Virus record (IMG/VR): IMGVR_UViG_3300028416_000004
Coordinates: 62,001-126,000 of that record
Reading direction: 5' to 3' (one strand)
Length of the DNA stretch: 64,000 nucleotides
This document shows, in pieces, positions 1,499 through 64,000 of the stretch; the first letter of the stretch is position 1; every line of letters starts with the position of its first letter. Made by a program: the position numbers and the translations under genes. The notes beneath the pieces are model-generated. The model did not search any database, was not told the DNA's origin, and saw only the letters and a list, made by a program, of their open reading frames with translations.

Positions 1499-1505
1499 AT
1501 AAATA
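1499..1505 (-). promoter_or_regulatory. Putative late promoter motif TATTTAT (representative copy)
   Basis: Same 7-mer lies 5-40 nt upstream of about 14 structural/packaging/lysis-type genes, in the coding orientation. Confidence 0.55.
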
Positions 1506-1518
1506 GTTTACAAAACTA

Positions 1519-1547
1519 AAAAGAGCACCAATTTTAAGTGCTCTTTT
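1519..1547 (-). terminator. Rho-independent terminator
   Basis: AAAAGAGCAC...GTGCTCTTTT inverted repeat with T tract, downstream of 1554..1736. Confidence 0.75.
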
Positions 1548-1553
1548 ATATTT

Positions 1554-1736
1554 TTACATGCCCATTAATTTATTATAATGCTCTTCCCAGACTTTCTCTT
1601 CTTTCTTCTTTAAGGCTTCCATCTCTTTTCTCTTAATTTCTAAATGTCTTTTAGCAACTTTTTTTCTTTGAGATTTTTTTAAACCTTTTTTAGTAGCAAT
1701 CCTAACTTTTACAGTTTTATTTTTTAATTTTTTCAT
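1554..1736 (-). CDS. Small basic hypothetical protein
   Basis: 60-aa Lys/Arg-rich ORF with an A-rich upstream region and a downstream terminator. Confidence 0.6.
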   Translation of the reverse strand: MKKLKNKTVKVRIATKKGLKKSQRKKVAKRHLEIKRKEMEALKKKEEKVWEEHYNKLMGM

Positions 1737-1789
1737 ATTAATTTATTTTTATATAAAAATATTTAAAAAAATAAAAATGTAAATATTTA

Positions 1790-3505
1790 TTAAATTCTAT
1801 TATTTATTTCATCTCTAATTTTTGCAGCTTCCATATAACTTTCAGACTCTAAAGCGTTTTCTAAAGCATCATTAAGTTCATCTATATTCATATCTTGTAA
1901 AGATTCTCTAGAACCCAACATTCCTTCTTCATTATCATTATTATCTTCTATAGAAATTCTATCATCTCCACTTTCTATAGCCCTCAAAATTTCATCTGCA
2001 TTATCAACTCCACCATCAACTATATCTTCTGGATTAGGTAATTCTCCATCATTTTCTTCTTGATAATCATCTACATCCTCTTCTATTTCATTAATCAAAT
2101 TTTCCAAAGCTCTAATTCCCTCTTGACCATCATGTAAAACTTTATCCATTAAATCTAAAAAATCTTGTGCGTCCAACATACCCAATTCATATAATAAAGT
2201 AGAAACAATAGTATAATCATCCTCTCTATCATGAACAATATAATCTATAGCATCATGTAAATATTTCCAAACTCTAGGACCTAACAATTTCATCCAGTGC
2301 TCCTCTTGATAAGAGTCAGCTCTTCCTAATACTGCTTTTTGCATTTTAGGAGACATATTCTCTAAGCTATAAGCAAATATATACTCAACTACAGACTTAG
2401 CGACTTCATGTAATAAAATAGGGAATAAATGAGCAGATGCTTTAGCTCCAACAACTTGTCTAACAGGAGTTTCTTCACTTTCTTCATTTTCTTCTTCAGA
2501 ATTTTCTGGTTGTCCAAATTTTAATTCTGATTTACCCATATTAATTCTAACACCAGTTTGTTTTGGGTCAAAACTCCAAGTCATTAATTCAGCTGTAGGC
2601 ATTATTTGTTTATATAATTCAAACAATTGTGGGTCAATATTATCAATGTCAGACTTAAAATCTCTTATGGTTTTATGACTTCTATAACCAGCTCCCATCA
2701 TTAGCATATTTTGAATAAATCTTTTATCTAAATTTTTCTTTAATTGCTCTTGTTCTTCTGAAGTAAAATCATCTTCTATAGTTTGCTCTAACTGTTGTTG
2801 TAAATCTTGACCAGAATCATCTTCCATATCCATATCTGGTCCATTTTGTAAAGGCTTTAAATCTGCTTCAATTTTTTGCATTATTCTATCTTCAACCCCA
2901 AAAGTTCTTTTTACTATATTCAAAGCAAGTCTCTCTAATTCATTTTTATATCTAGACTCTAACATACTTGCTAATTGAACTTTTTGCATAAAACTCATTG
3001 GAGCTAACAAACCAGCTTCTTTGGCGTTCCTTAAAATTTCATCAAACTCTTCTGTACCCAATTTAGATAACGTTTTAAAATCAGGTTCTCCTTTTTGAAA
3101 AATCTCTATGTTTTTAAAAGGAGTCTCTTCAGATTCTTCTGCTCCAGATAAACCTGATTTAATGTTAGGATGAATATACCTATCAGCTGAAGCTTCATCT
3201 TCTGGCCTTAATGGAGCTTCGCTAATCATTCTTCTGTATTTATTATATTCTTGTATAACTTTTAACTTTCTTTCGAAAGTATATTCACTTTCAAGTTTTA
3301 GTTCAGTAGAATAAGCTTTAGGTTTAGGTTTTTCTGTAGGAGAAGGATTTCTATCTGGTATACCTCTTCTCTTCTTTTTTTTGCCTTTATCTATTTCTGT
3401 ATCTGTATCCGTATCTGGTATAGCTATTTCATTTTCTTTAATCTTATCTTCCAACATGCGTTTAGCTATAGCTTCTTTTAATAATCTTTTTAAATCTTTT
3501 TTCAT
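1790..3505 (-). CDS. Acidic hypothetical protein with C-terminal UVR (UvrB/UvrC) motif, possible head/ejected protein
   Basis: C-terminus [25 protein letters not shown] fits the UVR consensus; N-terminal LKRLLKEA motif; TATTTAT at 3535-3541. Confidence 0.6.
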
Positions 3506-3573
3506 TATTATAATTTTAATATAAACATTATATAATAAATATGCCTAAAAAAGCTTTTTATAAACTTTGATAC

Positions 3574-3609
3574 AAAAAAAAAGCCTACAACTAATTGCAG
3601 ACTTTTTTT
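3574..3609 (-). terminator. Rho-independent terminator after nrdA
   Basis: Minus-strand RNA AGUCUGCAA-loop-UUGUAGGCU (with G-U pairs) followed by a U run. Confidence 0.75.
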
Positions 3610-3630
3610 GTTAAATTAAATCATAAATTT

Positions 3631-6213: not shown

Positions 6214-7236
6214 TTAAAAATCATCATCACTTCCATCAAAACTAATACTATTATCTTTTGAGTCACTTCCTACTCCAGACTTAGAATAATCAGCCACTCT
6301 CTTTTCAAAGAAGTTTGTTTTATTCTCTAAAGCTATATTTGCCATAAAATCAAAAGGATTTTTTGCATTAAACATTGGAGAACACTTTAAATCAATCAAT
6401 AAATTATCAGCTACATACTCTAAATATTGCTTCATTAAATCTGCATTCATTCCAATTAAACTAACTGGTAAAGATTCTGTAATAAACTCTTTTTCAATCT
6501 CTAAAGCAGAACTGATAATCTCTTTTATTCTAGATTCTGGAACTTTGTTTACAAGATGATTATTGTGTAAGTGTACAGCAAAATCACAATGCAAACCTTC
6601 ATCTCTAGAAATTAATTCATTAGAAAAACTAAGACCTGGCATTAACCCTCTACTTTTTAACCAAAAAATTGAACAAAAAGAACCAGAAAAGAAAATTCCT
6701 TCAACAGCCGCAAATGCTATTAACCTTTCAGCAAAACTGCTAGATTCAATCCATCTCAAAGCCCATTCACCCTTCTTTTTTACTGCATCTATATTCTCTA
6801 ATGCATTAAACAACATATTTTTTTCATCTTTATCTTTTACATAAGTGTCAATTAATAAAGAATAAGTTTCAGAGTGAATATTTTCCATTGCAATCTGAAA
6901 ACCATAAAAGAATTTAGCCTCTGCATATTGAACTTCACTAACAAAGTTTTCTGCTAAATTTTCATTTACAATTCCATCAGAAGCTGCGAAAAAAGCTAAA
7001 ATATTTTTAATAAAATATCTTTCATTATCATTTAACGTCTCCCAATCAGATAAATCTTGCTGCAAATCAATCTCTTCAGCAGTCCAAAAACTAGCTTCAG
7101 CTTTTTTGTAAAATTCCCATATATCATTATATTGTATTGGAAAAATAACAAATCTATTAGGATTTTCTTTTAAGATGTTTTCTTCTAAATGATTTAGTTT
7201 TTCTACATTTTTTTCGTTTAAAATCTCTTGACTCAT
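6214..7236 (-). CDS. nrdB: Ribonucleoside-diphosphate reductase class Ia, beta subunit
   Basis: [31 protein letters not shown] and RDEGLH di-iron motifs. Confidence 0.98.
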
Positions 7237-7270: not shown

Positions 7271-7278
7271 CAAATATA
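7271..7278 (-). promoter_or_regulatory. Bacteroidota-type -7 promoter element TATATTTG (representative copy)
   Basis: Fits TAnnTTTG; further copies at 231, 10307, 12058, 28073, 35559 and 40561, each upstream of a non-structural gene. Confidence 0.65.
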
Positions 7279-10245: not shown

Positions 10246-10418
10246 ACTTTTCTCTTTTTTAAAGTTTTTAATCAGTCTAAATCGTTTTTCTTAACTTTTA
10301 TAACCGCAAATATAACTCTTAATTGAGTCTAATTATAAATATAGTTATTTTTAAATTTCATATACAAATAAAGTTAAAAAAAACATAAAAAACAATATTT
10401 TTTCAATTTATTTTTCAA

Positions 10419-12053
10419 CTAAATACATTCCATATAATTATCACCTAAAGAATAATCAATTTCAAACACCATATCATTATATTTTGATAATATTTTTTGA
10501 ATTTCTCCTATTAAATTTAACTCTTCTGGATGTATATCTAAAACAAAAGAATCAAACACTTGAAACATAAATGATGACTTGTGACTTTCTAGCCATTTTT
10601 TTAATTCATTTAATTTATCTACCACTATTTCTGCAGCTGTAGATTGAACGTAATTATTAAATGCAGCATATGTCTTATTAGGTTTTATTAAAGTACCAAA
10701 AGGGTTTATTATATACCCCAATTCTTTATAAACATTATTAATATAATCAGAAGTATTTAAGATTGGATTTAAAAATTCTTTTATATTATTTAAAGCTTCC
10801 TCTACATTGATGCCTTCTATTTTAGAAATTAAACTTTTTATTAACGTATCACCTCCTCCATACAATATAGCATGATTAATGTCCTTTGCAACTTTTCTAT
10901 GAAAAGATGTTACTTCAACACTTCCTCCCAACATAGCTTTAGCTGTATTGTAATGCAAATCAGAGTTCATATTTTTAATTATAAATTCTTCATCTCTAGA
11001 TAAGTACATAGATAACCTTGTTTCAAAAGACTTATAATCAAATACTACAATTTTACCACCTTTATGTCTGGGGATAATTTCTTTTCTTATAGGACTATCT
11101 TTAGGTATCATTTGTGGATTAAACGAATCTACACAATTTATCCTACCAGTTATAGTTCTTTTATCTGAATATCTTAACATTATATATTTCTTATCATTTT
11201 CCCAAGTGCTCCTTACTCCTTCTGGAATTTTAAAATTTGAATTAAAATATATTTTATTTGTAGATAACCAAGAAGTTACTTTATCTTTAACTGTTTGCCT
11301 TATACAAGAATTTAACTCATCTTTAGTTAGAGTGTGTTTACTTATTATGTCATTCATCATCATAGGTATAAACCTATAAACATCTTTATTTAAAAAGATT
11401 TTTATAAAATCTTTAGGTTCTATATGATTAGAATATTTAGACCAAAAAACATTTTCCAAAGTCATAACATTTCTAACTTCATCGACATAAACATATTTAA
11501 TAATATTTTGATAACTAAATAAAGTACATTCTATTTTATTGATTAATCCTGTAAAAATCTTCTTATAATCTTTGCCTACATATTCTAAACTAGAAACACT
11601 TATAGCATAAGTATTTGAATCATTGTAAATATAGCATACATTTTTATGAAAATATATAAAAGACCTAGTTTTATTATTTATATTATTTAGAAAAAAATCT
11701 CTTATCTCTCCATCTAAAATAGCATCATAAGTTATAATGTTTTTATTGAAAAACTTTTTCATAGAAAATTCAAGAAACATTTTGATGTCTGTTTTGTTTT
11801 TTCCATCCTTTTCTGTTAAACTAAAAGTCCAAAATAAATTATCTGATATTTTAGGATTATCAATAGATTGTTCTGGGAAAATTTCTCTAACTTTATTCCA
11901 ACCTATTATTAAAGTAGGTAAATCTTGCTCTTCTGTAAAACTAATAGTTTCTATTAACTCTAAAGCAAAATTATCATAATGGACATTTATATACTCCAAA
12001 TCATCAGAAGAATAAGGGAGTATTTTACAAATTTTTATCAAACTATTAAGCAT
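10419..12053 (-). CDS. polA: Divergent family A DNA polymerase (polymerase domain)
   Basis: TGRI, NPQMIPK, motif A FDYKSFETR, DLH, motif B RKVAKDINHAILYG, NNYVQSTAAEI and motif C QVFDS. Confidence 0.85.
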   Translation of the reverse strand: MLNSLIKICKILPYSSDDLEYINVHYDNFALELIETISFTEEQDLPTLIIGWNKVREIFPEQSIDNPKISDNLFWTFSLTEKDGKNKTDIKMFLEFSMKKFFNKNIITYDAILDGEIRDFFLNNINNKTRSFIYFHKNVCYIYNDSNTYAISVSSLEYVGKDYKKIFTGLINKIECTLFSYQNIIKYVYVDEVRNVMTLENVFWSKYSNHIEPKDFIKIFLNKDVYRFIPMMMNDIISKHTLTKDELNSCIRQTVKDKVTSWLSTNKIYFNSNFKIPEGVRSTWENDKKYIMLRYSDKRTITGRINCVDSFNPQMIPKDSPIRKEIIPRHKGGKIVVFDYKSFETRLSMYLSRDEEFIIKNMNSDLHYNTAKAMLGGSVEVTSFHRKVAKDINHAILYGGGDTLIKSLISKIEGINVEEALNNIKEFLNPILNTSDYINNVYKELGYIINPFGTLIKPNKTYAAFNNYVQSTAAEIVVDKLNELKKWLESHKSSFMFQVFDSFVLDIHPEELNLIGEIQKILSKYNDMVFEIDYSLGDNYMECI

Positions 12054-12110
12054 ATTGCAAATATAAATAAATTATTTACAATAAACATATAAATTTATTT
12101 TTTTTAAAAA

Positions 12111-17401: not shown

Positions 17402-17483
17402 AACATTTAGTATATTGTATTAATAAATATTAATTGTTATTTTTTTATAAATTAAAACAATATAAAAAAAATGTAAAGCAAAA

Positions 17484-21422: not shown

Positions 21423-21463
21423 TATTGTTTATATTTATTTATAAATATTTTAAAATAAAAATA

Positions 21464-24613: not shown

Positions 24614-24680
24614 TTTATCAATTTATATCAATAATAAATATATTTTAATAAAAATATCTTAACAACTTTTAAAGTAAATA

Positions 24681-24710
24681 AAAAAAAGGAAGTTTAAAAC
24701 TTCCTTTTTT
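24681..24710. terminator. Rho-independent terminator (symmetric)
   Basis: AAAAAAGGAAGTTT / AAACTTCCTTTTTT near-perfect palindrome. Confidence 0.8.
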
Positions 24711-25339: not shown

Positions 25340-25400
25340 AACTGTAATTTTATTGTTTATTATATTATATAAACGTATTAATTTAAAAAATATTACAATT

Positions 25401-27383: not shown

Positions 27384-27430
27384 ATTTGAAATTAATTTAG
27401 TTATAAATAGTTTTCTTTTTTAAAAACAAA

Positions 27431-27457
27431 AAAAGCTCAAACATAATTTGAGCTTTT
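27431..27457 (-). terminator. Rho-independent terminator
   Basis: AAAAGCTCAAA-CATAA-TTTGAGCTTTT inverted repeat. Confidence 0.78.
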
Positions 27458-28053: not shown

Positions 28054-28110
28054 AATTTTTTATTTTATTTCACAAATATATGCATTTTATAGAAATTATG
28101 CAAATTTTAT

Positions 28111-30005: not shown

Positions 30006-30094
30006 AATTTATTTTTTATTTATTAATTATAAATAGTATTATCTAATTTTTTATAAAAATAATACTGGTTTATAAAAAGTAAACAATAATCATT

Positions 30095-35515: not shown

Positions 35516-35583
35516 TTTTTTAATTTTTTAATTATTATTTGCTATTTATTTATAACAACAAATATACGAAAAAAAATAATCAT

Positions 35584-40554: not shown

Positions 40555-40660
40555 ATGATACAAATATAATTAGTTTTCACTTTAATTCAAAAGAAAGCTA
40601 ATAAAAATTTAATAATTAATTCTGGGTGGTGGTTAATTATTTTATTGAAAATATTAAATT

Positions 40661-40960: not shown

Positions 40961-40979
40961 AAAAATAAAATATTAATAA

Positions 40980-42809: not shown

Positions 42810-42903
42810 TTTTTTTATTAATAAATATTTAATTTTTCTTTTTTCTAAGCTTTCTAGAAGACTTTTTTAACAATAAAACACTTTTTTTCAAAAAGTAAAT
42901 AGA

Positions 42904-44565: not shown

Positions 44566-44639
44566 AATTATTTATTTAATTATAAATATTATTTTTTTTT
44601 AAAAAATGCTTTTAGAGGAGCTGGGGGTGGTTTTTTTAA

Positions 44640-44957: not shown

Positions 44958-44969
44958 TTTATTTTAATT

Positions 44970-45302: not shown

Positions 45303-45306
45303 AATC

Positions 45307-45636: not shown

Positions 45637-45665
45637 CTTCTTTTTATTATAAATATGTTAAATTA

Positions 45666-46259: not shown

Positions 46260-46260
46260 T

Positions 46261-49960: not shown

Positions 49961-49997
49961 TTATATTATATAAATATGTTGTTTTTTTTATTTATTT

Positions 49998-50711: not shown

Positions 50712-50714
50712 AAA

Positions 50715-50972: not shown

Positions 50973-50984
50973 AATATTTTATTT

Positions 50985-51704: not shown

Positions 51705-52399
51705 AATCCAAATCTTGTTTTTAATGCGTTATAGTTTTGTCTAACTTCATCAGCACTTAATATTTTATTATATATTTTTAAACTTGGTATTTTGCCTTCA
51801 AATGGGTATGATGCTCCTCTATGGTTACCAATTCTTAGTTCATATGGTGTAGAATAATATTCATCCACAATTCCAGTCCATGTATTTGACGTTTCCAATT
51901 CTCCATTCACATATATTTGTACCGTTACATCACCAGATGAAAAATCTTGATGTAGCGTAGAACATACGTTATACCATGTGTTATCAGAATATGTTGTGGT
52001 AGTAAATAAACTTCTTTGAGTAGTGGTACCAGTTAATCTAGTCGAAAAAGAAAACATAAATCTATTATCAAACCTAAATGCGAGATACGGTAAGAAATTT
52101 GACCATGGCATATTGTTATTATTGTTTGATTGTGTTCTATTAAACCAAACATCCCAACTCATAGATGGTTTTTCACGATTATAGTTATTTACTGTCTGGG
52201 TATAATCATCTAAACCATCAAACACTAAACTACCTAAATTATCTGTTGTATATGAAACACCATTATTTAATGTCATGTCTTGGGAACCAACTAAATCATA
52301 TTCAGTTGTACTACCACTAACATAACTTTTATAATTAGAAGCATCAACATAAAACTCTAACCCATCTGTAACTATTTTTGGTGAATAATGAAAACTCAT
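51701..52399 (-). CDS. LamG/concanavalin-A-like protein
   Basis: Close paralogue of 49998..50711 (shared NNGVSYTTDNLGSL and FEGKIPSLKIYNKILS). Confidence 0.85.
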   Translation of the reverse strand: MSFHYSPKIVTDGLEFYVDASNYKSYVSGSTTEYDLVGSQDMTLNNGVSYTTDNLGSLVFDGLDDYTQTVNNYNREKPSMSWDVWFNRTQSNNNNNMPWSNFLPYLAFRFDNRFMFSFSTRLTGTTTQRSLFTTTTYSDNTWYNVCSTLHQDFSSGDVTVQIYVNGELETSNTWTGIVDEYYSTPYELRIGNHRGASYPFEGKIPSLKIYNKILSADEVRQNYNALKTRFGL

Positions 52400-52402: not shown

Positions 52403-55400
52403 TTATATACTTCTTACTATTGTTTTTATTTCCCAAGTACCAGTTGTTGCTGATACAGTTAAATTAGCTGTACCTCCAGACACATTCATATCAAATGTAA
52501 CAGGACTAGTATCACCTATATCTGTAGTAGTTGTTTCTGTATAGTTAACAGATGAACCACTAAATATTGACATAATTGAACCAGCTCTAGCACCAGTTCC
52601 TGTTAAAGTATATTCAAAGAACCCACCAGTATATGCACTTAAAGGTATTGAATACAATTCTGTTAAACCTGATGTTATTGAAGTTTTGAATGTTGTATTT
52701 AATGAAGGAGCTTGATAATTACCCATCAAAATTTCATCATCACTATTAACTTCTAAAATAGGCAATCCAGATATATCATTAACAGCGAATAGTGTACCAG
52801 TAAGATTGTCTGTAATACTAAATAATTCACCAGCAGAACCTTGAACTGTAAATAATGGGTCAGTAGAACTTGAACCAATAATTGTTAAAACATTTTGTCC
52901 ACTTCCAGACAATCTTGTTTCTCCTAAAACATCTAAAGTGTATTGAGGATTTCCTATCCCTACACCAATATACCCTTTTGTACTACCAGAACCATGAATA
53001 TGTAAGTGTGGTGTTGCTGTAGCATTATTTCCTGCATAGAAATTAATACTATCTTCTGTGCCCGTTCCTGCACCATTAAATATATGTAAGTTATTTGCTG
53101 CTGTTGAAGCAAACATAAACGTATCATCTGATTCTCCACCATATGCAACAGATGCATCTCGATTTGAACCTAATACACCCATAACAATAGAACTTACATT
53201 ATCGTTAATTAATTGCATTACTGTTGAACCAGAAGAATTTGTTGTCTTTCCATAAAATTCAGCTGTATATGGCAACGTTCTATCAACTCTTGCACGAAAC
53301 TGACCTGTTGAACCAGATACCGACAATCTATCAGATGGAGTTTCTACACCAACACCAACATAACCATCATTGTCAATAACTAACTTATCTCCTCCTGAAA
53401 TATGCCCAAATGTAATAGTGTTTCCACTTGCTCCAATGACTGGTGTATTTGTCGTTAATGAATCATTAAATCTAATATTTACTCTTTCATCTCCACTCTC
53501 AAAATTAGCTAAACTATTTGCAACTGAATCATAAATATGTAATTTTTGTGTTGGAGTTTCAGTACCAATACCAATATATCCTTTTGTACTACCAGAACCT
53601 TGGATATGTAAATGCGAAGTTGATAACGCATTACCTCCAGCATAAAATCTAATGTAATCTTCTGTTCCAGTACCAGGTCCGTTAATCAAATTTAAACCAT
53701 TTGCAGCAGAATTAGAATAAATATAACTATCACTAGGTACACCAAAAGATTGTATTCCAGAATAAGTAGTTCCGACAGTACCGACATTTATTGAACTAGT
53801 ACCATCTGTTGCTCCAAATCTAATTAAACTATCTGTATCACTTGTTACAACACTTATAAGTGGTCCACTACCATTATCTAAATTAGTCGCAAATGTTGTT
53901 GTACCATCTGTCACTTCTAATATATCACTTGGTGTAATTGTACCAATACCAACTTTACCATCCGCTGTTACATCTAATAAGTTAGCACTATTGTTTCTAA
54001 CTCTAACAATGGGTCTAGTAGTAACACCACTCCAAGGGTCAACCCCAGGGTTTGTGGTAACTCTACCTTGTAACATTATCAATGGGTTGACACCAGTATC
54101 TACAGAAGGGTCTATAACTGATTGTATATATAAGTTTGTTGATGTATTAGTATTATTAAAAGACCTAAAAACTGGGTTGAATGAACCATCTGTAGATACA
54201 GCATTAGTTATAGCTAAATAATCTGTACTATCTATAGTTCTAAATCTAGCAATATCTTCAAAACTAGATGTGCCACCACTACTAACAATATCTAAATTAA
54301 ATGTTGGGTCACTAACACCAATACCAACATTTCCATCATTATAATATATACTTGTGCCTGATTGACTCCATGGAGTAGTTCCGCTTAAATTAGAACCATC
54401 ACCATAATATGTTGTAGCAGTTAAACTGCCATCTACAATAGTATCACTATCTATGTATGTATCATATCCAGCATTACCAACAAATACTCTATCTTGATTA
54501 TCAACACCAATTAGAGATACATTAACATCAGCAATTGTTCTACCTTGTAAGAAATAAGAATTATCTCTTAAATTAATATGTCCGTTAAATACATCTATTG
54601 CCGAGTTTGATGTAATACTACTAGCTGTTAGTGTATTAAGTGTTGTATCACCTGTAACATCTAAATCACCATTTATTGTTAAACCACTAACTTGATTAAA
54701 TGTTGAAGTAAGTGAACCACCATTATCATCGGTTATCGTAAATGTGTTATTATCATTATATGTAAATCCTGTAGTAGTTATACCCACATCAGTTCTAATA
54801 ACTTCTTGTGGTAAATTGTCCCCATTACCAACCCATAAATAACCTGTTGTTAAGTTTGGTAAACCAGCAGTTCTAGCAGTGTTAAATATAAATATTTGTC
54901 CGTTTGTAGTACCAACATTTAATACTTTAGCAATTCTTTGTATTTGTGTATTTGTACCAGTTGGTCTGAATTTAGTTAACCCACCATCAGTTTTTGACAT
55001 ATAAAGAACATCATTAACTTCCCATGTTTCACCAAATGGGTTAAGAGTTGTTGAACCACTTGTCGTATCAATACCGCTTAATTTACCGAAAGTGATAAGT
55101 GGATAAACACCAGCATTATCAAAATCTTCAGCAGTAAACCCAATTACTGGCATTGTACTACCAGTTGATGCATTAGCCAATTCAACTTCATGTATATCAT
55201 TATCAAACCCTGTAATATAAACTGGACAACCCTTATCTATTGTTCCAGCAGAACCTTTTTTACTCCATATAGTTACATTACCAGCAGAAACATATTCTTC
55301 ACCTGTTAACCATTGATTAGTAGGTGCATCAAAATAAAGTAATCTACCTTGATATGTATTATCTGGTGTTGCTGGTATATTTGTTGTTACATCATCTAAA

Positions 55401-56782
55401 TCGTTAAGTGTTATACCTGTGTATGTAGATGCTGATAACACCCCATCTATTGTTAACCCTGTAAGAGTGTTAATAGTTGCTGATAAATCGCTTAAACCAC
55501 CATTTCTACTAATTGTAAATGTGTTAGCATCATCATATGTAAATCCAGTAACATAGAAGTTATCACCACCACCTGTTGTAAATCCTGTTACAACAACACT
55601 ACCACCATCATTTCTATCTAATGTTAATGTTTCCGATGAGAATGTACCACCAGTAACAAATGTATTTGTATCAATAGGTATAGAAACATCAACTTTAATA
55701 ATATCATCTATTGTTGTGATTGTAGTATTACTACCACCACTAATTGTCCTAAAATATAAATCTGTTCCAGACTTGCCACTAAACACTTCATTAGCACCAC
55801 CACTATTAATTCCGTTTTGAATTTTAGAATCTAATTCGGTCTGTAAATTGGTAACATCAGATATTGTATGAGTATGTGCTGTAGATATTAAATTATTAAA
55901 TGATGTTTGATGTGGGTTATTTGTATCGCCAGTATGTGTATCAAATAATGTTAAATCAGTTTTTCCACTTAAGACTGGGGAAAGGTTTACACTATACAAA
56001 TTACCTCCTTGTATATTATTGTCAAACTCAATCGTTTCACCATTAAGATTAGCGGCTGTTGTATAACTATCTGTCATTCCAGTGGTAAAACCACTAACCT
56101 GAAAAGTCCCTCCAGTAGAATTTGTATAAGTGACAATGCCTGTCAATATATCATAAATACCACTAACAACATAAACATCAGATGCTAAAGATGATAAATC
56201 AGTATTAATAGTAATACCATCATTTCTACTTGTTGATAAATTATAAGTTAAACTATTAAAAGTTTGACCAGTTACAAATGTATCATTAACATCTATTGAC
56301 GATAAATCAACATCAAAAGAATTACCATCATTTCTTTCAAAAGTAATTAATGAAGTATTATTATCGTAAGTACCTCCAGTGGTATAAAAATCTGTAAAAC
56401 CACTAACTAAAACATTATTGCCATCATTTCTTTCTAATGTTAAAATTTGAGATGAAAAAGTACCGCCAGTTACATAAAAATTATCTGTTGATATACCACT
56501 TAAATTACTTCCATCACCATAAAAAGTACCTCCACTTATAATATTAGTTGATATTGAATTTAAAGAAATATCATCATCTAAATTTATAATAGGATTACTT
56601 GCTGTACCTCCTGTATTTATGTTAATACCTGGCTGAACATTTACATTAGAAGTAACAAATAAATCAGATAAATCAGTAGAACCAGAATAAATAGTTCCAC
56701 CACTTATTGTAACTCCAGAAACACTATCGAGAGATAAATTTCCTTGTATTTTTTCAGCATTTATATTTTTAGTTGCACTCAT
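52403..56782 (-). CDS. Long tail fibre-like protein
   Basis: 1459 aa, Thr/Gly/Ser-rich; N-terminal VTGGT...RNDG repeats and C-terminal GNVGIG fibre repeats. Confidence 0.8.
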   Translation of the reverse strand: MSATKNINAEKIQGNLSLDSVSGVTISGGTIYSGSTDLSDLFVTSNVNVQPGININTGGTASNPIINLDDDISLNSISTNIISGGTFYGDGSNLSGISTDNFYVTGGTFSSQILTLERNDGNNVLVSGFTDFYTTGGTYDNNTSLITFERNDGNSFDVDLSSIDVNDTFVTGQTFNSLTYNLSTSRNDGITINTDLSSLASDVYVVSGIYDILTGIVTYTNSTGGTFQVSGFTTGMTDSYTTAANLNGETIEFDNNIQGGNLYSVNLSPVLSGKTDLTLFDTHTGDTNNPHQTSFNNLISTAHTHTISDVTNLQTELDSKIQNGINSGGANEVFSGKSGTDLYFRTISGGSNTTITTIDDIIKVDVSIPIDTNTFVTGGTFSSETLTLDRNDGGSVVVTGFTTGGGDNFYVTGFTYDDANTFTISRNGGLSDLSATINTLTGLTIDGVLSASTYTGITLNDLDDVTTNIPATPDNTYQGRLLYFDAPTNQWLTGEEYVSAGNVTIWSKKGSAGTIDKGCPVYITGFDNDIHEVELANASTGSTMPVIGFTAEDFDNAGVYPLITFGKLSGIDTTSGSTTLNPFGETWEVNDVLYMSKTDGGLTKFRPTGTNTQIQRIAKVLNVGTTNGQIFIFNTARTAGLPNLTTGYLWVGNGDNLPQEVIRTDVGITTTGFTYNDNNTFTITDDNGGSLTSTFNQVSGLTINGDLDVTGDTTLNTLTASSITSNSAIDVFNGHINLRDNSYFLQGRTIADVNVSLIGVDNQDRVFVGNAGYDTYIDSDTIVDGSLTATTYYGDGSNLSGTTPWSQSGTSIYYNDGNVGIGVSDPTFNLDIVSSGGTSSFEDIARFRTIDSTDYLAITNAVSTDGSFNPVFRSFNNTNTSTNLYIQSVIDPSVDTGVNPLIMLQGRVTTNPGVDPWSGVTTRPIVRVRNNSANLLDVTADGKVGIGTITPSDILEVTDGTTTFATNLDNGSGPLISVVTSDTDSLIRFGATDGTSSINVGTVGTTYSGIQSFGVPSDSYIYSNSAANGLNLINGPGTGTEDYIRFYAGGNALSTSHLHIQGSGSTKGYIGIGTETPTQKLHIYDSVANSLANFESGDERVNIRFNDSLTTNTPVIGASGNTITFGHISGGDKLVIDNDGYVGVGVETPSDRLSVSGSTGQFRARVDRTLPYTAEFYGKTTNSSGSTVMQLINDNVSSIVMGVLGSNRDASVAYGGESDDTFMFASTAANNLHIFNGAGTGTEDSINFYAGNNATATPHLHIHGSGSTKGYIGVGIGNPQYTLDVLGETRLSGSGQNVLTIIGSSSTDPLFTVQGSAGELFSITDNLTGTLFAVNDISGLPILEVNSDDEILMGNYQAPSLNTTFKTSITSGLTELYSIPLSAYTGGFFEYTLTGTGARAGSIMSIFSGSSVNYTETTTTDIGDTSPVTFDMNVSGGTANLTVSATTGTWEIKTIVRSI

Positions 56783-56803
56783 CTTTAATAAATATTATCA
56801 TTT

Positions 56804-57005: not shown

Positions 57006-59174
57006 TTATATTGTTACTGTCCATCCTTTGTTAGTTGCTATTAAAATATCAGTAGCAGATAAATTTGCTGTACCTGGATTACCACTAACATTTATAACTT
57101 TAGCTGATGCTATACCTAAATTGTTGAATATATTCACTATGTTATCCCTATCTAAATTGTTATTTTGGAATTCTAAATTCTGTACAGCTCCATATATATT
57201 ACAAATAGATAGATTGTATGTGGAACCATTAAACATATCTCTACCATCAGTCACGGAAGACAAATCCCAAGAACCTATTTTCCTTAATTGGTTTGTTGTT
57301 GAATAAAAACACCTATATGTGTTTGTGACGTTAGATGTGTCAAGTGTTGGTAACTCAAATAACATACCACAAGAATAAAACGTTTGATACAAACTGGTAA
57401 CATTAGATGTGTTGTATTGTGGTATACTTTTCAGACGATTACAATCATAAAACATTTGTTGCATACTTGTACAACTTGACAAATCCATATCAGGACCTTC
57501 TTCTAATTTATAACAATTTTGAAACATGCTTTGCATTGTAGTTACATTTGATGTATCATCTAAACTAACACTTTCCAACTCATAACAATTTTGGAACCAT
57601 AACGAACAATATGTCACAGCTGACATACCAACACACGTTATTGATGATAAACTACGACAATCCTTGAACGTATATAATTCATTCGTAACACTATTACTGA
57701 AATCTATTGTTGGTAACCATTTCAACTCATAACAACCACTAAATGTTTCCCTAAAGTTTGTACCACTACTCGTTGAAAAATCAACCCCAACAGATTGTAA
57801 ACGAGTACAACCATAAAACATTCTATAAAAATTTTGGATGTTAGATGTATCCACATTTGGGAACTCTCTTAATTCTGTAGCTTGTCTAAACATGTTATTA
57901 GCATCTGTGACACTAGACATATCTAGTGGTGGTAGTGTCTCTATATCCGATGAATAGAACATTTGTACCATATTAGTCACGTTAGATGTATCGAACAACG
58001 GTATTGTTTTAATGTTTTTTGTGTTGTAAAACATACTAGACATAGTAACCACACTACTCGTATCCATCATCGGTATTTTATATAACCCAGTACCATTAAA
58101 CATACTAGACATATTAGTTACGTTACCAGTGTTACTAATAGATAAATTTTTAGTTAACCACCTAGTCACTTGAAACATTAAACTAGTTGTGGTACAATTA
58201 CTCAAATCTAATGGTGGTAAACTCCATAATTCATAACAATTTTGGAATAACCCTTGACAGTTGGTTGAATTAACTGTGTTGATACCAAGAACCTTTCTTA
58301 ATACAACACAGGTTGTGAATGTTTCTCTAAAGTTAGTACAAGATGTGGTATTATTAAGTTCAACTTCTCTTAAACTCCTACAACTATAAAACATTCTATA
58401 AAGTGTTGTAACTGAAGAACAATCAAATATTGGGACTCTTTCTAAATTACTACAATTATAAAACATACTATCCATTTGTAACACGTTAGATGTATCTAAA
58501 TCTGGTATTTCAATTAAATTACTACAACCAATAAACATACTAGATGCATCAGTAATTCCATACATATCAAAATTACTCAACTTATATATTTGAGAATATC
58601 CAAACAAATTAGTAGCATTTGTAATTGAATGAGAACCAATCCAATCTATATGTTCTAACATATTACTATAACTACTACCTAAATCACCCGATGTTAAATT
58701 AGGTACAGATAATCTAATCTCTAAAACACCATTATAAGTATTTCCATATCCACCTGTTCCAGCAAAAGGAACTTCATCAATATCAAAATTCGTTAATGTC
58801 TGTCCACTTTGTGGTGTAATGGTTACCACTGCCTGTCTATAACCATAACTTGTTGTTGTTGCTGACGAAACGCCACTATATTGTATATTATATGTTGTTA
58901 CATCACCACCAGTTGTTGGGTGGTTAGCAGTATATCCAGTACTAAAACCATCACCCCAATCAACTTCAAAATCACCAGCACATCTAAAACCTAAATAATT
59001 ATCACCATCTTCAAATACCGCAACCAATAAATGTATTATATCTTCACCACTAGTTACTGAAGGTAAATCAATCCATTCACTAGGTCTAGTATATGTTTTG
59101 TACGGTGTTGGGTCATCAGGTGGATTACCACTATTTACCGTTAATCTATTATTATTTACTAATATAACTGACAT
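57006..59174 (-). CDS. BspA/DUF285-like leucine-rich repeat protein
   Basis: About 17 repeats of the form LDTSNVTNM..MF..C..L..IP; N-terminal VDWGDG (PKD-like) motif. Confidence 0.85.
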   Translation of the reverse strand: MSVILVNNNRLTVNSGNPPDDPTPYKTYTRPSEWIDLPSVTSGEDIIHLLVAVFEDGDNYLGFRCAGDFEVDWGDGFSTGYTANHPTTGGDVTTYNIQYSGVSSATTTSYGYRQAVVTITPQSGQTLTNFDIDEVPFAGTGGYGNTYNGVLEIRLSVPNLTSGDLGSSYSNMLEHIDWIGSHSITNATNLFGYSQIYKLSNFDMYGITDASSMFIGCSNLIEIPDLDTSNVLQMDSMFYNCSNLERVPIFDCSSVTTLYRMFYSCRSLREVELNNTTSCTNFRETFTTCVVLRKVLGINTVNSTNCQGLFQNCYELWSLPPLDLSNCTTTSLMFQVTRWLTKNLSISNTGNVTNMSSMFNGTGLYKIPMMDTSSVVTMSSMFYNTKNIKTIPLFDTSNVTNMVQMFYSSDIETLPPLDMSSVTDANNMFRQATELREFPNVDTSNIQNFYRMFYGCTRLQSVGVDFSTSSGTNFRETFSGCYELKWLPTIDFSNSVTNELYTFKDCRSLSSITCVGMSAVTYCSLWFQNCYELESVSLDDTSNVTTMQSMFQNCYKLEEGPDMDLSSCTSMQQMFYDCNRLKSIPQYNTSNVTSLYQTFYSCGMLFELPTLDTSNVTNTYRCFYSTTNQLRKIGSWDLSSVTDGRDMFNGSTYNLSICNIYGAVQNLEFQNNNLDRDNIVNIFNNLGIASAKVINVSGNPGTANLSATDILIATNKGWTVTI

Positions 59175-61221: not shown

Positions 61222-63210
61222 CTAATAAATTAAATCAGTTAATTTCGTTATTTCACCACTATGTGTTGTCGCACTATAATCAGTATTTACAGTTAAATTC
61301 GATGTGATTACTTCAGAAGTGGTTGGATAATTAATCGATAAACCACTATTTGAATAGATACTACTATTAACTACTTGTAATCTACCAAAATTAGTTATAT
61401 TAGTTAAAGTGTCTCCACTACCTGTATTAACTATATTTGAATTATTAATTAACACGTTTAAATATTGTCCATCACCATAAGAATCTAAATCATTATAACC
61501 ATTCACATAAGAGTTGTTCAATCTAAATGTTGATGTTGTAGTATCTGTATGGTCATATAATATAAACCTATCAGCAGTTGATATAATTTTACTATTATTC
61601 ACATTTATCTCACCTCCAAATCTAGGATGAAATGTATAATTAAAATTACCCTCTATATTACCTCTAAAATTAACTTTTGAAGTTCCAAAAGATTGCATAA
61701 TAACATTACTAGTTGTCCCAGTACCTAACAACTTGATATCTCCATCAAAATTAATTATATTACCACTAGATGAACTAACAATAAACCTACCTACACCACT
61801 ACTAGTTTTTGTTGTTATAGTACCTTTATAATTTATAATATTATTAGAATGATTTAACCAGAATAAACCAGTAGTTAAACTGTTATCAGAATAATCATAT
61901 AAATTTGAATTCATATTTAAAACCCAACCACCACTAATAAATGTTGATACAATTGCACCGTAATATGCGAATGTTGTATATGCATTTTGATAATAAATAT
62001 CCTTTATGTTGACATTTATATTACCACAAGTTAATTGTCTCATATTAAAAACTTGAGCTAACGACAACATATATTCGCCATTTATATCAATATTAGATGA
62101 AGTGCAATTGTTTCTAATATAAAAAGAATAAGCGCAATCATAATAGTATCTACGTTTTACGTAAGATGAAAAATCCAAAAACTCGGAATCCATAATAGTA
62201 TAGACACTACCATATCCAGCATTACCAGATAAGAAGTATTTGTGTTCCTCATCAGATATTAATGTGAATTTACAGTCATTAACGGTATTTCTGATTTCAA
62301 TTAATTGACAACTATTAGACCTTAAACTTTTAGTTTCTGAAAAGAAGTTAAAATTATTACCACCATTACATGTGAAATACATCGATAAACCGTTACTTGT
62401 ATCTGGTCCTAAACCAGTAGCTTCAAATTCTAAATAACCCAACACTGTACATGTTTCACCAGTTGTTCCGTTTGGTGAGAATAGACCAACACTTTGACCA
62501 GTTGGTGCCTCATTAATCATATTAATTTTAACACCAGCACAAAAATAATACGTTATACCATCTTTCCATAAATTTAATTCAGTCTGCCAAACACCATCAT
62601 ATTGATTACCAGTAGAATCACTATTATCAAAAACAATTGTTTGTGGTAACACATATATTAAATCACCATATGTTGAAGCTGTTTTAGCACCATAAAGTGT
62701 TTTAAATGGTTTATCTAATCTACCTTTTTCACCAGTTGAGTCATCACCATTCTCATCAACAAAAAGTGTATTTGAAATAGTTACACCTGTAAAGAAACCA
62801 TCAATGTTTATACTATTATTAGCATTATCTAATAATGTTAATACACCATTCTCTTTACTATAAGTGCTTCCTGTAATAAAAGTATCTGTTATACCTGTAA
62901 CATCTATTGTAACAAAATCATTTCTAGAAATTGTTAATAAATCTAACTCTTGATTATAAGTAGCTCCAGTTACATATTTATCTTGAGATGTTGCTGCACT
63001 AATTATATGTTGAACATCAACATAATCTATATTCCCATTTGATGAATTTCTTGCTAATATTTGAAATAAAGAATTATCATTACTTGGAACATCTACAATA
63101 TTTAATGTATTAGCAGATAAGTTAGCTTGAATATAAGTATTTCCACTTACAGTACCACCACTTAATGGTAAAAATTTATCATCTATTTTAAAAAAATATT
63201 GTCCAGCCAC
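61222..63210 (-). CDS. Tailspike-like protein with probable beta-helix domain
   Basis: GTG start; LPLSGGT; LFVDENGDDSTG....DKPFKTL beta-helix entry motif; Asn/Ile-rich rungs. Confidence 0.68.
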   Translation of the reverse strand: MAGQYFFKIDDKFLPLSGGTVSGNTYIQANLSANTLNIVDVPSNDNSLFQILARNSSNGNIDYVDVQHIISAATSQDKYVTGATYNQELDLLTISRNDFVTIDVTGITDTFITGSTYSKENGVLTLLDNANNSINIDGFFTGVTISNTLFVDENGDDSTGEKGRLDKPFKTLYGAKTASTYGDLIYVLPQTIVFDNSDSTGNQYDGVWQTELNLWKDGITYYFCAGVKINMINEAPTGQSVGLFSPNGTTGETCTVLGYLEFEATGLGPDTSNGLSMYFTCNGGNNFNFFSETKSLRSNSCQLIEIRNTVNDCKFTLISDEEHKYFLSGNAGYGSVYTIMDSEFLDFSSYVKRRYYYDCAYSFYIRNNCTSSNIDINGEYMLSLAQVFNMRQLTCGNINVNIKDIYYQNAYTTFAYYGAIVSTFISGGWVLNMNSNLYDYSDNSLTTGLFWLNHSNNIINYKGTITTKTSSGVGRFIVSSSSGNIINFDGDIKLLGTGTTSNVIMQSFGTSKVNFRGNIEGNFNYTFHPRFGGEINVNNSKIISTADRFILYDHTDTTTSTFRLNNSYVNGYNDLDSYGDGQYLNVLINNSNIVNTGSGDTLTNITNFGRLQVVNSSIYSNSGLSINYPTTSEVITSNLTVNTDYSATTHSGEITKLTDLIY

Positions 63211-63211
63211 T

Positions 63212-63571
63212 TTATATATTATTTATATCTTCTTCAATTTTAATACTTATACCTCCTTCTCTAGGTAAAGACATCTTTGTTCCATTTGCAAAAAACAATT
63301 CAAATTCACCAATAAAATTTCCAGAAATAGCAGTATCTCCTTCTACCCATTGATATTGTATTATACCAGAGTCATTAGAAATTACTTGAGCTACTTTAGA
63401 AGATATAACTAAAGCTCCACAATCATCTACCATAGAAAATTCAACTTTAGTTACAGCACTTAAATTCAATCTATTCCAACCTCCTAAACAACCTTTATCA
63501 TAAACGGTAGCTATCAAAGCTGGTGCTGTATCATTTCTTTTTATAATAAATGGTTTTTCTCCTCTTGCCAT
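63212..63571 (-). CDS. BppU-like Ig-fold virion protein
   Basis: FIIKRNDTAP.L, GIIQYQW..GDT...G.F.GEFE..F..G...S.P. Confidence 0.7.
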   Translation of the reverse strand: MARGEKPFIIKRNDTAPALIATVYDKGCLGGWNRLNLSAVTKVEFSMVDDCGALVISSKVAQVISNDSGIIQYQWVEGDTAISGNFIGEFELFFANGTKMSLPREGGISIKIEEDINNI

Positions 63572-63575
63572 ACTT

Positions 63576-63938
63576 TTAATTATTAACTATTTCTAATCTT
63601 ACTTCTTGATTTTCAAGTCTTATGTCAATATTTTGACCAACTACAACAGGGCTTAATTTAAATCTTGTTATAAGTCTCTTTTCTGGACTATCTACTGTAT
63701 ATTTTAAAACCCAATTCATTTCATATATATCATCAATATTGTATAAACCTGGGGATAAATTTACATAATACCTTCCTAAAGAATCATTTATAACTTCAGG
63801 ACTCTCTATAACAATAGAATCTCCTTCTATTGTTACATAACCAGATATTTCTTCTACATTTATTAAATCATATGTTTCTCCACTTAAAGTGGTTATATTG
63901 ATACAATAAAAATCTCTATAAAGTCTTAAATAAGCCAT
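63576..63938 (-). CDS. Hypothetical Ig-like virion protein
   Basis: Probable start MAYLRLYR at 63938; GRYYV motif; TATTTAT at 63965-63971. Confidence 0.6.
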   Translation of the reverse strand: MAYLRLYRDFYCINITTLSGETYDLINVEEISGYVTIEGDSIVIESPEVINDSLGRYYVNLSPGLYNIDDIYEMNWVLKYTVDSPEKRLITRFKLSPVVVGQNIDIRLENQEVRLEIVNN

Positions 63939-64000
63939 AATCAAAAAAAGATATTTCCTCACAAATAAATAGTAACAAAAAAGGAGACTGTATTAAAACA

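What the first reader, a model, noticed from the sequence alone, without database searches (positions are those of the whole stretch)
1499..63971. Putative late promoter TATTTAT, the reverse complement of the T4 late promoter core
Seen: plus-strand ATAAATA (TATTTAT on the coding strand) occurs at 1499, 3535, 17423, 21441, 24634, 27403, 30029, 42821, 44582, 45649, 49970, 56788 and 63965, 5-40 nt (mostly 11-29 nt) upstream of structural, packaging or putative virion genes. Before the plus-strand holin it appears flipped (35543). In four cases (1519, 3574, 24681, 27431) a terminator lies just upstream of the motif, insulating it. Established: T4 gp55 recognises TATAAATA on the coding strand. Inference: this phage uses a different late sigma or activator specificity. 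Caveat: the 7-mer is common in AT-rich DNA.
Basis: partly seen in the sequence, partly recalled or inferred. Interest (0 to 1): 0.6.

Follow-up and report, generated by a model that had tools for sequence, protein, structure and literature searches.

The report
Conserved phage late-promoter motif TATTTAT
A short sequence, (A/C)TATTTAT, sits just upstream of the particle-building, DNA-packaging and lysis genes of this 232-kb marine phage and its distant relatives; it is very probably their late-gene promoter, and the likeliest reader is a previously unannotated phage sigma-like protein rather than the T4-type factor gp55.

Summary
All 14 listed sites exist, and all four upstream terminators are there. 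The signal is not AT-richness: in 172 sense-oriented upstream intergenic regions of the 232.5-kb genome, [AC]TATTTAT occurs 65 times against 10.3 expected (z 16.5). It lies 4-45 nt before start codons and has no -35 element.

It precedes portal, terminase, protease, sheath, tube, baseplate and holin genes. Replication genes instead carry the Bacteroidota host promoter (TTG...TAnnTTTG).

The motif stays invariant upstream of terminase and portal orthologues while flanks diverge. It recurs before the same genes in the cultured Flavobacterium phage immuto and in Microcystis phage Mel-JY01.

No gp55, gp45 or phage RNA polymerase was found. The genome encodes three sigma-like proteins. Motif enrichment tracks the divergent 294-aa one ("sigma3"): six of six genomes with it are enriched, none of three without it. 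Immuto and Mel-JY01 lack any RpoD-like sigma.

Best reading: a -10-type late promoter read by host RNA polymerase core plus a phage sigma, probably sigma3. The T4 reverse-complement resemblance is true of the letters but has no mechanistic meaning. No transcription start was mapped.

The parts
1499..1505 (-). Late-type motif (cTATTTATa on the coding strand), 16 nt upstream of gene 766-1482 (protease-like / virion structural, weak PHROG hits)
1519..1547 (-). Intrinsic terminator hairpin plus T-run immediately upstream of the 1499 motif
3535..3541 (-). Late-type motif (aTATTTATt), 29 nt upstream of gene 1790-3505 (571 aa, no family hit)
3574..3609 (-). Terminator-like hairpin plus U-run downstream of the nrdA gene and upstream of the 3535 motif
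   Evidence: -20.3 kcal/mol, z -3.4
17423..17429 (-). Late-type motif, 21 nt upstream of gene 17090-17401 (baseplate wedge-like), which leads into the 1655-aa lysin-domain protein 12111-17078
21441..21447 (-). Late-type motif, 18 nt upstream of gene 17484-21422 (1312 aa, unknown)
24634..24640 (-). Late-type motif, 20 nt upstream of gene 21464-24613 (1049 aa, tape-measure-like)
24682..24710 (-). Bidirectional terminator hairpin upstream of the 24634 motif
27403..27409 (-). Late-type motif (cTATTTATa), 19 nt upstream of gene 26898-27383 (161 aa, unknown)
27431..27457 (-). Terminator hairpin upstream of the 27403 motif
30029..30035 (-). Late-type motif (cTATTTATa), 23 nt upstream of gene 29091-30005 (baseplate hub-like)
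35543..35553 (+). Two overlapping late-type motifs on the plus strand (cTATTTATTTATa), 34 and 30 nt upstream of the plus-strand holin-like gene 35584-36063
42821..42827 (-). Late-type motif, 11 nt upstream of the portal gene 40980-42809; invariant in 7 relatives with 79-87% identical portal
44582..44588 (-). Late-type motif, 16 nt upstream of the large terminase gene 42904-44565; invariant in relatives while flanks diverge; also present before terL of immuto and Mel-JY01
45649..45655 (-). Late-type motif (aTATTTATa), 12 nt upstream of gene 45307-45636; metatranscriptome contigs of four runs end at 45634
49970..49976 (-). Late-type motif, 40 nt upstream of gene 47833-49929 (698 aa, unknown)
56788..56794 (-). 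Late-type motif, 5 nt upstream of gene 52403-56782 (1459 aa, tail-fibre-like by similarity to immuto proteins); possibly a leaderless transcript
63965..63971 (-). Late-type motif (cTATTTATt), 26 nt upstream of gene 63576-63938, with a hairpin plus T-run just upstream
7271..7278 (-). Contrast class: host-type Bacteroidota -7 element TATATTTG, 34 nt upstream of nrdB (6214-7236)
12058..12065 (-). Contrast class: host-type TATATTTG, 4 nt upstream of the family-A DNA polymerase gene 10419-12053
40561..40568 (-). Contrast class: host-type TATATTTG, 6 nt upstream of the DNA polymerase gene 38455-40554
35559..35566 (-). Contrast class: host-type TATATTTG upstream of the operon 35515 to 30545 that ends in the RecD2-like helicase; it shares the divergent intergenic region with the holin late motif
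25373..25397 (-). Third promoter class (TGTAATATTTT-N12-CGT), 33 nt upstream of gene 24743-25339; the same bipartite motif precedes the sigma2 gene outside the window

Best explanation
The element 5'-(A/C)TATTTAT(A/T)-3' on the non-template strand is the single -10-type element of this phage's late promoters.

The phage has no detectable RNA polymerase of its own, so host RNA polymerase core must do the transcribing, directed by a phage-encoded specificity factor. The most likely factor is a divergent 294-aa sigma-like protein, here called sigma3 (genome 165718-166602, outside the window). It has a sigma domain 2 fold, a disordered acidic linker and a small C-terminal helical domain.

Transcription is inferred to start 5-6 nt downstream of the motif, at an A-rich position. 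That gives leaders of 0-40 nt. Intrinsic terminators upstream of several sites make them separate late transcription units.

Early and replication genes use the Bacteroidota host sigma-A promoter (TTG...TAnnTTTG). A small third class (TGTAATATTTT-N12-CGT) drives, among others, one of two tandem RpoD-like phage sigma genes. The programme therefore looks like a sigma cascade.

Shown here: enrichment, strand and position bias, separation by function, conservation across relatives, co-occurrence with sigma3, absence of gp55, gp45 and a phage RNA polymerase.
For: Enrichment and geometry:
- [AC]TATTTAT is 65 against 10.3 expected in sense upstream intergenic regions (z 16.5).
- Only the position 5' of the motif adds information (A or C in 64 of 78). 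There is no -35 signal. A is enriched at the 5th and 6th nt after the motif (64% and 70% against 45% background).
- The minimum spacer to the ATG is 4 nt, the same as for host-type promoters whose G is at -5.

Function:
- The motif lies directly upstream of portal, terL, prohead protease, head completion, sheath, tube, baseplate wedge and hub, tape-measure-like and holin genes.
- TAnnTTTG lies upstream of nrdB, SSB-like, PolA, PolC-like, primase and sigma1 genes (Fisher p 0.003).

Conservation:
- TATTTAT is invariant before terL and portal in 7 relatives (terL 81-92% identical) while flanks change.

Distant relatives:
- Immuto: 18 against 0.8 expected (z 19.7) in 50 kb; 44 forward against 7 reverse genome-wide, with every annotated gene but two in the 50 kb examined on the forward strand; the motif precedes terL, portal, sheath, tube and hub.
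- Mel-JY01, which has a cyanobacterial host: 6 against 0.6.

The factor:
- No gp55 or gp45 PHROG hit. No T7-like or beta-subunit RNA polymerase domain.
- Sigma3 has a weak Sigma70_r2 hit (E 9e-4) and a weak ECF-superfamily hit (E 1.5e-3).
- Residues 70-169 of its model superpose on sigma domain 2 of many solved sigmas (Z 8-10, rmsd 2.5-3.8 A over 82-98 residues).
- Its nearest Atlas clusters are named viral 'RNA polymerase sigma factor family'.

Co-occurrence:
- All six sigma3-positive genomes are enriched (own, immuto, Mel-JY01, G001, G004, G005; z 7.7-19.7).
- Three sigma3-negative phages that carry an RpoD-like sigma are not (1 of 2.3, 0 of 0.5, 0 of 0.6 expected).
- Immuto and Mel-JY01 have no Sigma70_r2 hit at all.
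Against: - No transcription start site, timing or binding data exist for any of these phages.
- The metatranscriptome data are assembled contigs and cannot show RNA ends. Some contigs cross the motif-bearing intergenic regions.
- The sigma3 evidence is weak on its own terms. The Pfam hit is below the curated cut-off. A profile search of solved structures found nothing. Z of 8-10 is within the range that helical proteins can reach by chance. The C-terminal domain has no informative match.
- Co-occurrence of sigma3 and the motif is confounded by shared ancestry, since all sigma3-positive phages share the same structural module. Another lineage-specific protein could be the true reader.
- About 13 consensus sites lie in the presumed early 0-60 kb region, and some structural genes have a TAnnTTTG match as well.
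- The genome is estimated at 88% complete, so a missing factor cannot be excluded.
Confidence: 0.7

Rival explanations
1. TATTTAT is a late promoter, but it is read by one of the two tandem RpoD-like phage sigmas (sigma2, genome 58184-59047, or sigma1, 57223-58089) rather than by sigma3.
For: Both are full-length sigma-70 proteins with regions 1.2 to 4. Sigma2 has lost the canonical -35-contacting residues of region 4.2 (STESVRQ in place of TRERVRQ), which fits promoters without a -35 element. The gene trio p263-sigma2-sigma1 is conserved in relatives that carry the motif.
Against: Immuto and Mel-JY01 have the motif before the same genes but no Sigma70_r2 hit at E up to 1. Three phages with sigma2-like genes but no sigma3 show no enrichment.
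Confidence: 0.1
2. Host primary sigma reads TATTTAT as a weak, non-consensus -10/-7 element. A phage activator or sigma-appropriating protein confers late timing, as T4 MotA/AsiA does for T4 middle promoters.
For: TATTTAT shares T and A at the first two positions with TATAAT and TAnnTTTG. No biochemical data exclude it. Many phage genes here have unknown function.
Against: The same 8-mer is used by phages of Bacteroidota and of a cyanobacterium. Their primary sigmas have very different -10 consensus sequences. There is no upstream activator-site conservation. It differs from the host consensus at two nearly invariant positions (T-7 and G-5).
Confidence: 0.1
3. The motif is a conserved cis element that is not a promoter, for example an RNA processing site, a translation-initiation enhancer or a binding site for a DNA-packaging or replication protein.
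For: It always lies in the 5' region of genes. Bacteroidota lack Shine-Dalgarno sequences and use other leader features. Some RNA contigs read through the sites.
Against: The distance to the ATG varies from 4 to 45 nt, which is unlike a translation signal. It is absent before replication genes. It often follows terminators, where a new start is needed. Its length, asymmetry and A-rich site 5-6 nt downstream are typical of a -10 element.
Confidence: 0.06
4. The pattern is a chance product of 86% A+T intergenic DNA.
For: The 7-mer is only 1.4-fold over expectation when counted over the whole window on both strands.
Against: z 12-16 against dinucleotide-preserving shuffles of the same intergenic regions, with strand asymmetry. 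The same enrichment appears in 35% G+C immuto DNA (z 19.7). The motif is invariant in diverged orthologous spacers.
Confidence: 0.01

Closest known systems
T4 late promoters (TATAAATA) read by gp55 with gp33 and the gp45 sliding clamp
   Same: A single 8-bp A+T-only box about one helical turn upstream of the start, with no -35 element, placed before virion, packaging and lysis genes. The specificity factor is phage-encoded, carries little more than a sigma domain 2, and acts on host RNA polymerase core. The phage has a T4-like portal, capsid and tail module.
   Different: The box is (A/C)TATTTAT, the base-by-base complement of the T4 box, not the same sequence. No gp55 or gp45 homologue was detected. 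The sigma3 profile against a gp55 profile gives 0.2% probability. Sigma3 is 294 aa with an extra C-terminal domain, against 185 aa for gp55. Replication uses PolA and PolC-type enzymes, not gp43, so clamp-coupled activation is not implied.
Bacteroidota primary sigma promoter (-33 TTTG / -7 TAnnTTTG)
   Same: Present in the same genome, at the same distance range from start codons (minimum spacer 4 nt), and A+T-rich. This is probably the host's promoter, used for early and replication genes.
   Different: The late motif has A where the host element has the nearly invariant T-7, and lacks G-5. It shows no upstream TTG. It serves a different gene set.
Sigma cascades of Bacillus phage SPO1 (gp28, then gp33/gp34) and the phiEco32 / 7-11 sigma gp36
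   Same: Phage-encoded sigma factors redirect host core from host-type early promoters to phage-specific middle and late promoters. Several promoter classes coexist in one genome, and one sigma gene is placed under a different promoter class.
   Different: The order of the cascade here is only inferred from promoter placement. The candidate late sigma is far more divergent than SPO1 or phiEco32 sigmas, and its promoter has no -35 element.
Immutovirus (Flavobacterium phage vB_FspM_immuto) and Microcystis phage Mel-JY01
   Same: Closest cultured relatives by portal (38-42% identity), terminase, capsid, sheath and tube. Both encode a sigma3 homologue (34% and 29% identity) annotated only as hypothetical. 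Both carry the same motif before the same genes.
   Different: Smaller genomes (160 and 190 kb) without the two RpoD-like sigma genes. No promoter analysis of them was found in the searched literature.

Membership tests
T4-type late promoter system (gp55/gp33/gp45) | 8-bp box TATAAATA on the non-template strand at about -10 | tested here: not met
   The box on the coding strand is (A/C)TATTTAT(A/T). TATAAATA in the sense orientation is far less enriched (27 against 10.2) than TATTTAT (87 against 24.6).
T4-type late promoter system (gp55/gp33/gp45) | No -35 element; a single short box suffices | tested here: met
   No position from -20 to -2 relative to the motif carries more than 0.21 bit.
T4-type late promoter system (gp55/gp33/gp45) | Located upstream of late (virion, packaging, lysis) genes | tested here: met
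   Portal, terL, protease, sheath, tube, baseplate and holin genes carry it. Timing itself was not measured.
T4-type late promoter system (gp55/gp33/gp45) | A gp55 homologue is encoded | tested here: not met
   PHROG 234 and 12791 give no hit at E up to 1 in six frames. hhalign of the sigma3 family against the gp55 family gives probability 0.2%. The genome is 88% complete, so absence is not absolute.
T4-type late promoter system (gp55/gp33/gp45) | A gp45-type sliding clamp acts as activator | tested here: not met
   PHROG 223 gives no hit at E up to 1. gp33 was not searched.
Sigma-70 superfamily (for sigma3) | Sigma domain 2 (regions 1.2-2.4) | tested here: inconclusive
   Pfam Sigma70_r2 E 9e-4, 19-21 bits, below the 24-bit cut-off; TIGR02937 E 1.5e-3. 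Model residues 70-169 align to sigma domain 2 of 40 or more solved sigmas at Z 8-10, rmsd 2.5-3.8 A. One homologue carries PF04542. Atlas neighbours are named sigma factor. A profile search of PDB sequences found nothing.
Sigma-70 superfamily (for sigma3) | Sigma domain 4 (helix-turn-helix binding the beta flap and -35) | tested here: inconclusive
   The C-terminal 106 residues, folded alone (pLDDT 75), give only generic helical matches (Foldseek E above 0.6; VIA Z up to 6.3; sigma28 at Z 5.3 within the noise).
Sigma-70 superfamily (for sigma3) | Binds RNA polymerase core and directs promoter-specific initiation | not testable with these tools
This needs biochemistry.
Bacteroidota sigma-A promoter | -7 element TAnnTTTG with T-12, A-11, T-8, T-7, T-6 and G-5 nearly invariant | tested here: not met
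   Late sites end in TTTAT(A/T), not TTTG. Only 7 of 58 genes with a consensus late site also have any TAnnTTTG in the same intergenic region.

The most novel reading that the evidence does not exclude
Sigma3 defines a new family of phage late sigma factors that is the functional counterpart of T4 gp55, but as a single polypeptide carrying both a domain 2 and a C-terminal domain. This would be the 'fused late sigma' that the T4 literature notes has not been found in nature. Its box, (A/C)TATTTAT, would be a portable promoter that works with RNA polymerase cores of hosts as different as Bacteroidota and Cyanobacteria, across a large and abundant marine and freshwater clade of 160-520-kb phages.
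Probability: 0.25. Interest if true: 0.75.

Novelty: new variant of a known kind. Interest (0 to 1): 0.6.

Why it matters
Phage late transcription by a dedicated sigma is a classic paradigm, known in detail only for T4, SPO1 and a few others.

Here a different late box, with a candidate new sigma family, is shared by a widespread and almost unstudied clade. That clade includes marine Bacteroidota jumbo phages, Immutovirus, a Microcystis phage and 300-520-kb megaphages.

The practical gains would be:
- A simple rule for annotating late operons in these genomes.
- A function for a conserved 'hypothetical' protein family with about 300 members.
- A directly testable system, because immuto and its Flavobacterium host are in culture.
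- A short orthogonal promoter/sigma pair that could be useful for genetics in Bacteroidota, where standard promoters do not work.

Next to host-type promoters and a third promoter class, it also outlines a multi-sigma temporal cascade in a jumbo phage that lacks its own RNA polymerase.

Tried and rejected
- gp55 and gp45 searches with PHROG profiles in six frames found nothing. hhalign of the sigma3 family against T4 gp55 alone and against a gp55 family alignment was insignificant.
- Sequence searches of sigma3 against solved structures gave nothing useful: the single sequence gave only a spurious trigger-factor hit, and the profile gave nothing.
- Foldseek on the full sigma3 model gave no significant match, although the weak list was dominated by sigma chains. 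The VIA second look gave the domain 2 matches.
- The C-terminal domain folded alone gave no informative match in Foldseek or in the wide VIA search. Its sigma-4 or gp33 nature stays open.
- RNA evidence: 13 RNA runs (most recorded as seawater metatranscriptomes) hold part of window 40500-46400. Contigs of four runs end at 45634, 15 nt below the 45649 motif. All four leave a gap over the terL upstream region (about 44543-44645). But other contigs cross the portal and 45649 intergenic regions, depth is low, the A+T-rich spacers are prone to drop-out, and contigs cannot show RNA ends. I treat this as inconclusive.
- The canonical sigma-70 (TTGACA/TATAAT) scan was not enriched: 101 against 115, and 117 against 123.
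- A phage RNA polymerase was not found: no T7-like or beta-subunit domain and no RNA polymerase domain in nine large unknown proteins. Very divergent jumbo-phage enzymes could escape these profiles.
- Literature searches for a described TATTTAT phage promoter, or for promoter work on immuto, found none.
- MAFFT of terL spacers misplaces the motif of immuto and Mel-JY01 because the distances differ. Those two were read directly instead.


Full report
**Context.** The window is bases 62001-126000 of a single 232,514-bp viral contig, a metagenome record that CheckV rates 88% complete. It has 27% G+C. I called 255 genes, and 5.3% of the genome is intergenic DNA at 86% A+T. Forty-eight of the 50 genes in the window lie on the minus strand.

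The portal, large terminase, capsid, sheath and tube proteins are distant T4-type proteins. Their closest cultured relatives are Flavobacterium phage vB_FspM_immuto (portal 38% identical) and Microcystis phage Mel-JY01 (42%). The replication genes are not T4-like: a family-A polymerase, a PolC-like polymerase in two genes, and a RecD2-like helicase carrying an intein. Most of the RNA runs that hold part of the region are recorded as seawater metatranscriptomes.

**The observation.** Every listed site exists. On the coding strand the sites read (A/C)TATTTAT(A/T) and lie 5-40 nt before a start codon.

Counted over the window on both strands, the 7-mer is barely enriched: 97 against 71. The caveat about A+T-rich DNA therefore had to be tested properly. 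I took the 172 upstream intergenic regions of the whole genome in the sense orientation of the downstream gene. I compared them with 400 dinucleotide-preserving shuffles of the same regions:
- TATTTAT: 87 against 24.6 (z 12.2).
- [AC]TATTTAT: 65 against 10.3 (z 16.5).
- T or G before the motif: not enriched.
- The antisense form: 53 against 29.6 (z 4.6). Divergent regions counted twice and the palindrome TATTTATAAATA explain part of this.
- TATTTAT is the commonest of all 21 arrangements of five T and two A.

Aligning 78 sites shows information only at the motif and at the base before it (A or C in 64 of 78). Nothing resembles a -35 element. A is enriched at the 5th and 6th base after the motif.

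All four claimed terminators are present.

**A second promoter class gives the contrast.** The 8-mer TATATTTG occurs 16 times in the sense orientation and never in the antisense orientation in co-directional intergenic regions. Many copies have TTG about 19 nt upstream. TAnnTTTG is enriched in the sense orientation (39 against 11.8) but not in the antisense orientation (15 against 14.1). This is the published -33/-7 promoter of the Bacteroidota primary sigma, with G at -5, so the host is very probably a member of Bacteroidota.

The two classes divide the genes:
- TAnnTTTG stands before nrdB, an SSB-like gene, PolA, the PolC-like polymerase, primase, the RecD2 operon and one phage sigma gene.
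- TATTTAT stands before portal, terminase, prohead protease, head completion, sheath, tube, baseplate wedge and hub, a tape-measure-like protein, a tail-fibre-like protein and the holin.

On the annotated genes this gives Fisher p 0.003. Host-type sites dominate the first 60 kb of small genes. Late-type sites dominate 120-200 kb. Both classes have a minimum spacer of 4 nt to the ATG. That fits a start at the 5th base after the element, and a few leaderless messages.

**Conservation.** Fourteen related contigs have terminase 81-100% identical. In the seven non-identical ones that I examined, the spacers before terL and portal have diverged, yet TATTTAT is invariant at the same place. The motif is enriched in their intergenic regions too.

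In immuto (35% G+C), the motif precedes terL, portal, sheath, tube, baseplate hub, phoH and other genes. It is 18 against 0.8 expected in 50 kb (z 19.7). Genome-wide it is 44 forward against 7 reverse, with every annotated gene but two in the 50 kb examined on the forward strand. The capsid gene lacks it in both phages and sits behind the protease promoter, so even the operon layout is shared.

In Mel-JY01, whose host is a cyanobacterium, the motif again precedes terL, portal and others (6 against 0.6). A box kept across hosts from different phyla argues for a phage-encoded reader.

No gp55 or gp45 profile hit exists at E up to 1. No T7-like or beta-subunit RNA polymerase domain was found. Instead, the genome has three sigma-like genes, all outside the window:
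- Two tandem full-length RpoD/RpoS-like genes lie about 3-5 kb upstream of the window's first base: sigma1 at 57223-58089 and sigma2 at 58184-59047. Sigma1 is 51% identical to sigmas of Bacteroidales genomes assembled from metagenomes.
- Sigma1 has a host-type promoter.
- Sigma2 has lost the canonical region 4.2 residues. It is preceded by a third, bipartite promoter (TGTAATATTTT-N12-CGT) that is conserved before its orthologues down to 45% identity.
- Sigma3 (165718-166602, 294 aa) has only sub-threshold Sigma70_r2 and ECF-superfamily hits. Even so, it belongs to a well-conserved family of about 300 unannotated viral proteins.

The sigma3 model superposes residues 70-169 on sigma domain 2 of dozens of solved sigmas (Z 8-10). 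Its nearest Atlas clusters are labelled viral sigma factors.

Sigma3 homologues occur in immuto, Mel-JY01 and an uncultured 484-kb phage, the same records that rank highest in the portal search. Immuto and Mel-JY01 have no Sigma70_r2 hit at all.

Among phages found through sigma2 similarity, the three with sigma3 (518, 368 and 306 kb) show the enrichment (z 8.7-14.9). The three without it (206, 62 and 38 kb; two of them complete) show none.

Motif and sigma3 therefore co-occur in six of six genomes, against none of three without it. This is the best available pointer, but it is confounded by common descent.

**Relation to T4.** The architecture matches the T4 late promoter described: one short A+T box at -10, no -35 element, late genes, and a minimal phage sigma on host core. 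Membership is not met, because the box differs and gp55 and gp45 are not detectable.

TATTTAT reads the same backwards. Its reverse complement is therefore simply its complement, ATAAATA, which is the T4 core. This is a property of the letters, not a mechanism, since sigma domain 2 reads the non-template strand directionally.

**Weaknesses.**
- No start site or timing has been measured.
- The RNA data are contigs and are ambiguous.
- The sigma3 fold evidence is moderate, and its C-terminal domain is unassigned.
- The complex prediction could not be run.

**Verdict.** It is a new variant of a known kind of system. It has a cultured model in which it can be tested directly.

Noticed in passing
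window 25373-25397 (-); also genome 331, 8345, 21020, 24343, 59084 (before sigma2), 135960, 136472: A third, bipartite promoter-like motif, TGTAATATTTT-N11/12-CGT(T/A)TA. Eight copies, all intergenic and in the sense orientation, 25-40 nt before start codons. It resembles ECF-sigma promoters (AAC-type -35, CGT -10). It is conserved before sigma2 orthologues down to 45% protein identity.
   Followed up: partly
genome 57223-59901 (about 2-5 kb upstream of the window's first base); loci L006, L023-L034: A conserved gene trio: a 263-aa unknown protein, then sigma2, then sigma1. The two sigmas are 287/288-aa RpoD-like proteins of the short Bacteroidota type. The trio is shared with relatives including a 518-kb megaphage. 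Sigma1 keeps canonical region 4.2; sigma2 does not.
   Followed up: partly
window 7271-7278, 10307-10314, 12058-12065, 28073-28080, 35559-35566, 40561-40568 (all -): Bacteroidota host-type promoters (TTG...TAnnTTTG) lie before replication and nucleotide-metabolism genes. This points to a marine Bacteroidota host for an uncultured phage. Several lie only 4-6 nt from the ATG, suggesting leaderless messages.
   Followed up: partly
window 30545-33880 (-): The RecD2-like helicase (1111 aa) is interrupted by an intein with Hint and LAGLIDADG homing-endonuclease domains, at residues about 361-704.
   Followed up: no
window 36060-38333 and 38455-40554 (-): The PolC/DnaE-like replicative DNA polymerase is split into two genes (a 699-aa part with an N-terminal exonuclease, and a 757-aa part) separated by a 121-nt spacer. 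A separate family-A polymerase is at 10419-12053.
   Followed up: no
window 40500-46400: The region is present in seawater metatranscriptome assemblies from several studies. Contigs of four runs end at exactly 45634 (the start codon of the 109-aa gene). All four leave the terL upstream spacer uncovered.
   Followed up: partly
genome 59955-60347, 61384-61818, 163466-164674 (upstream regions): A possible fourth upstream motif, TT(G/T)ACTTT(T)ATGATT, followed by a TATATT/TATAAC-like box. Only three copies were seen.
   Followed up: no
window 49998-52399 (-) and genome 186980-188349: A family of five paralogous virion structural proteins of about 230-240 aa, three of them in tandem in the window. 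They are similar to two adjacent 'structural protein' genes of immuto.
   Followed up: no
genome 219567-222077 (-) and 216070-219570 (+): An 836-aa protein carries an ART-PolyVal ADP-ribosyltransferase domain, which could modify host proteins such as RNA polymerase, as T4 Alt does. Next to it is a 1166-aa fused Mre11/Rad50-like (SbcCD) protein.
   Followed up: no
window 12111-17078 (-): A 1655-aa protein with a C-terminal endolysin-like domain (PHROG 181, residues 1354-1565) lies in the baseplate and tail operon. It is probably a virion-associated cell-wall hydrolase.
   Followed up: no
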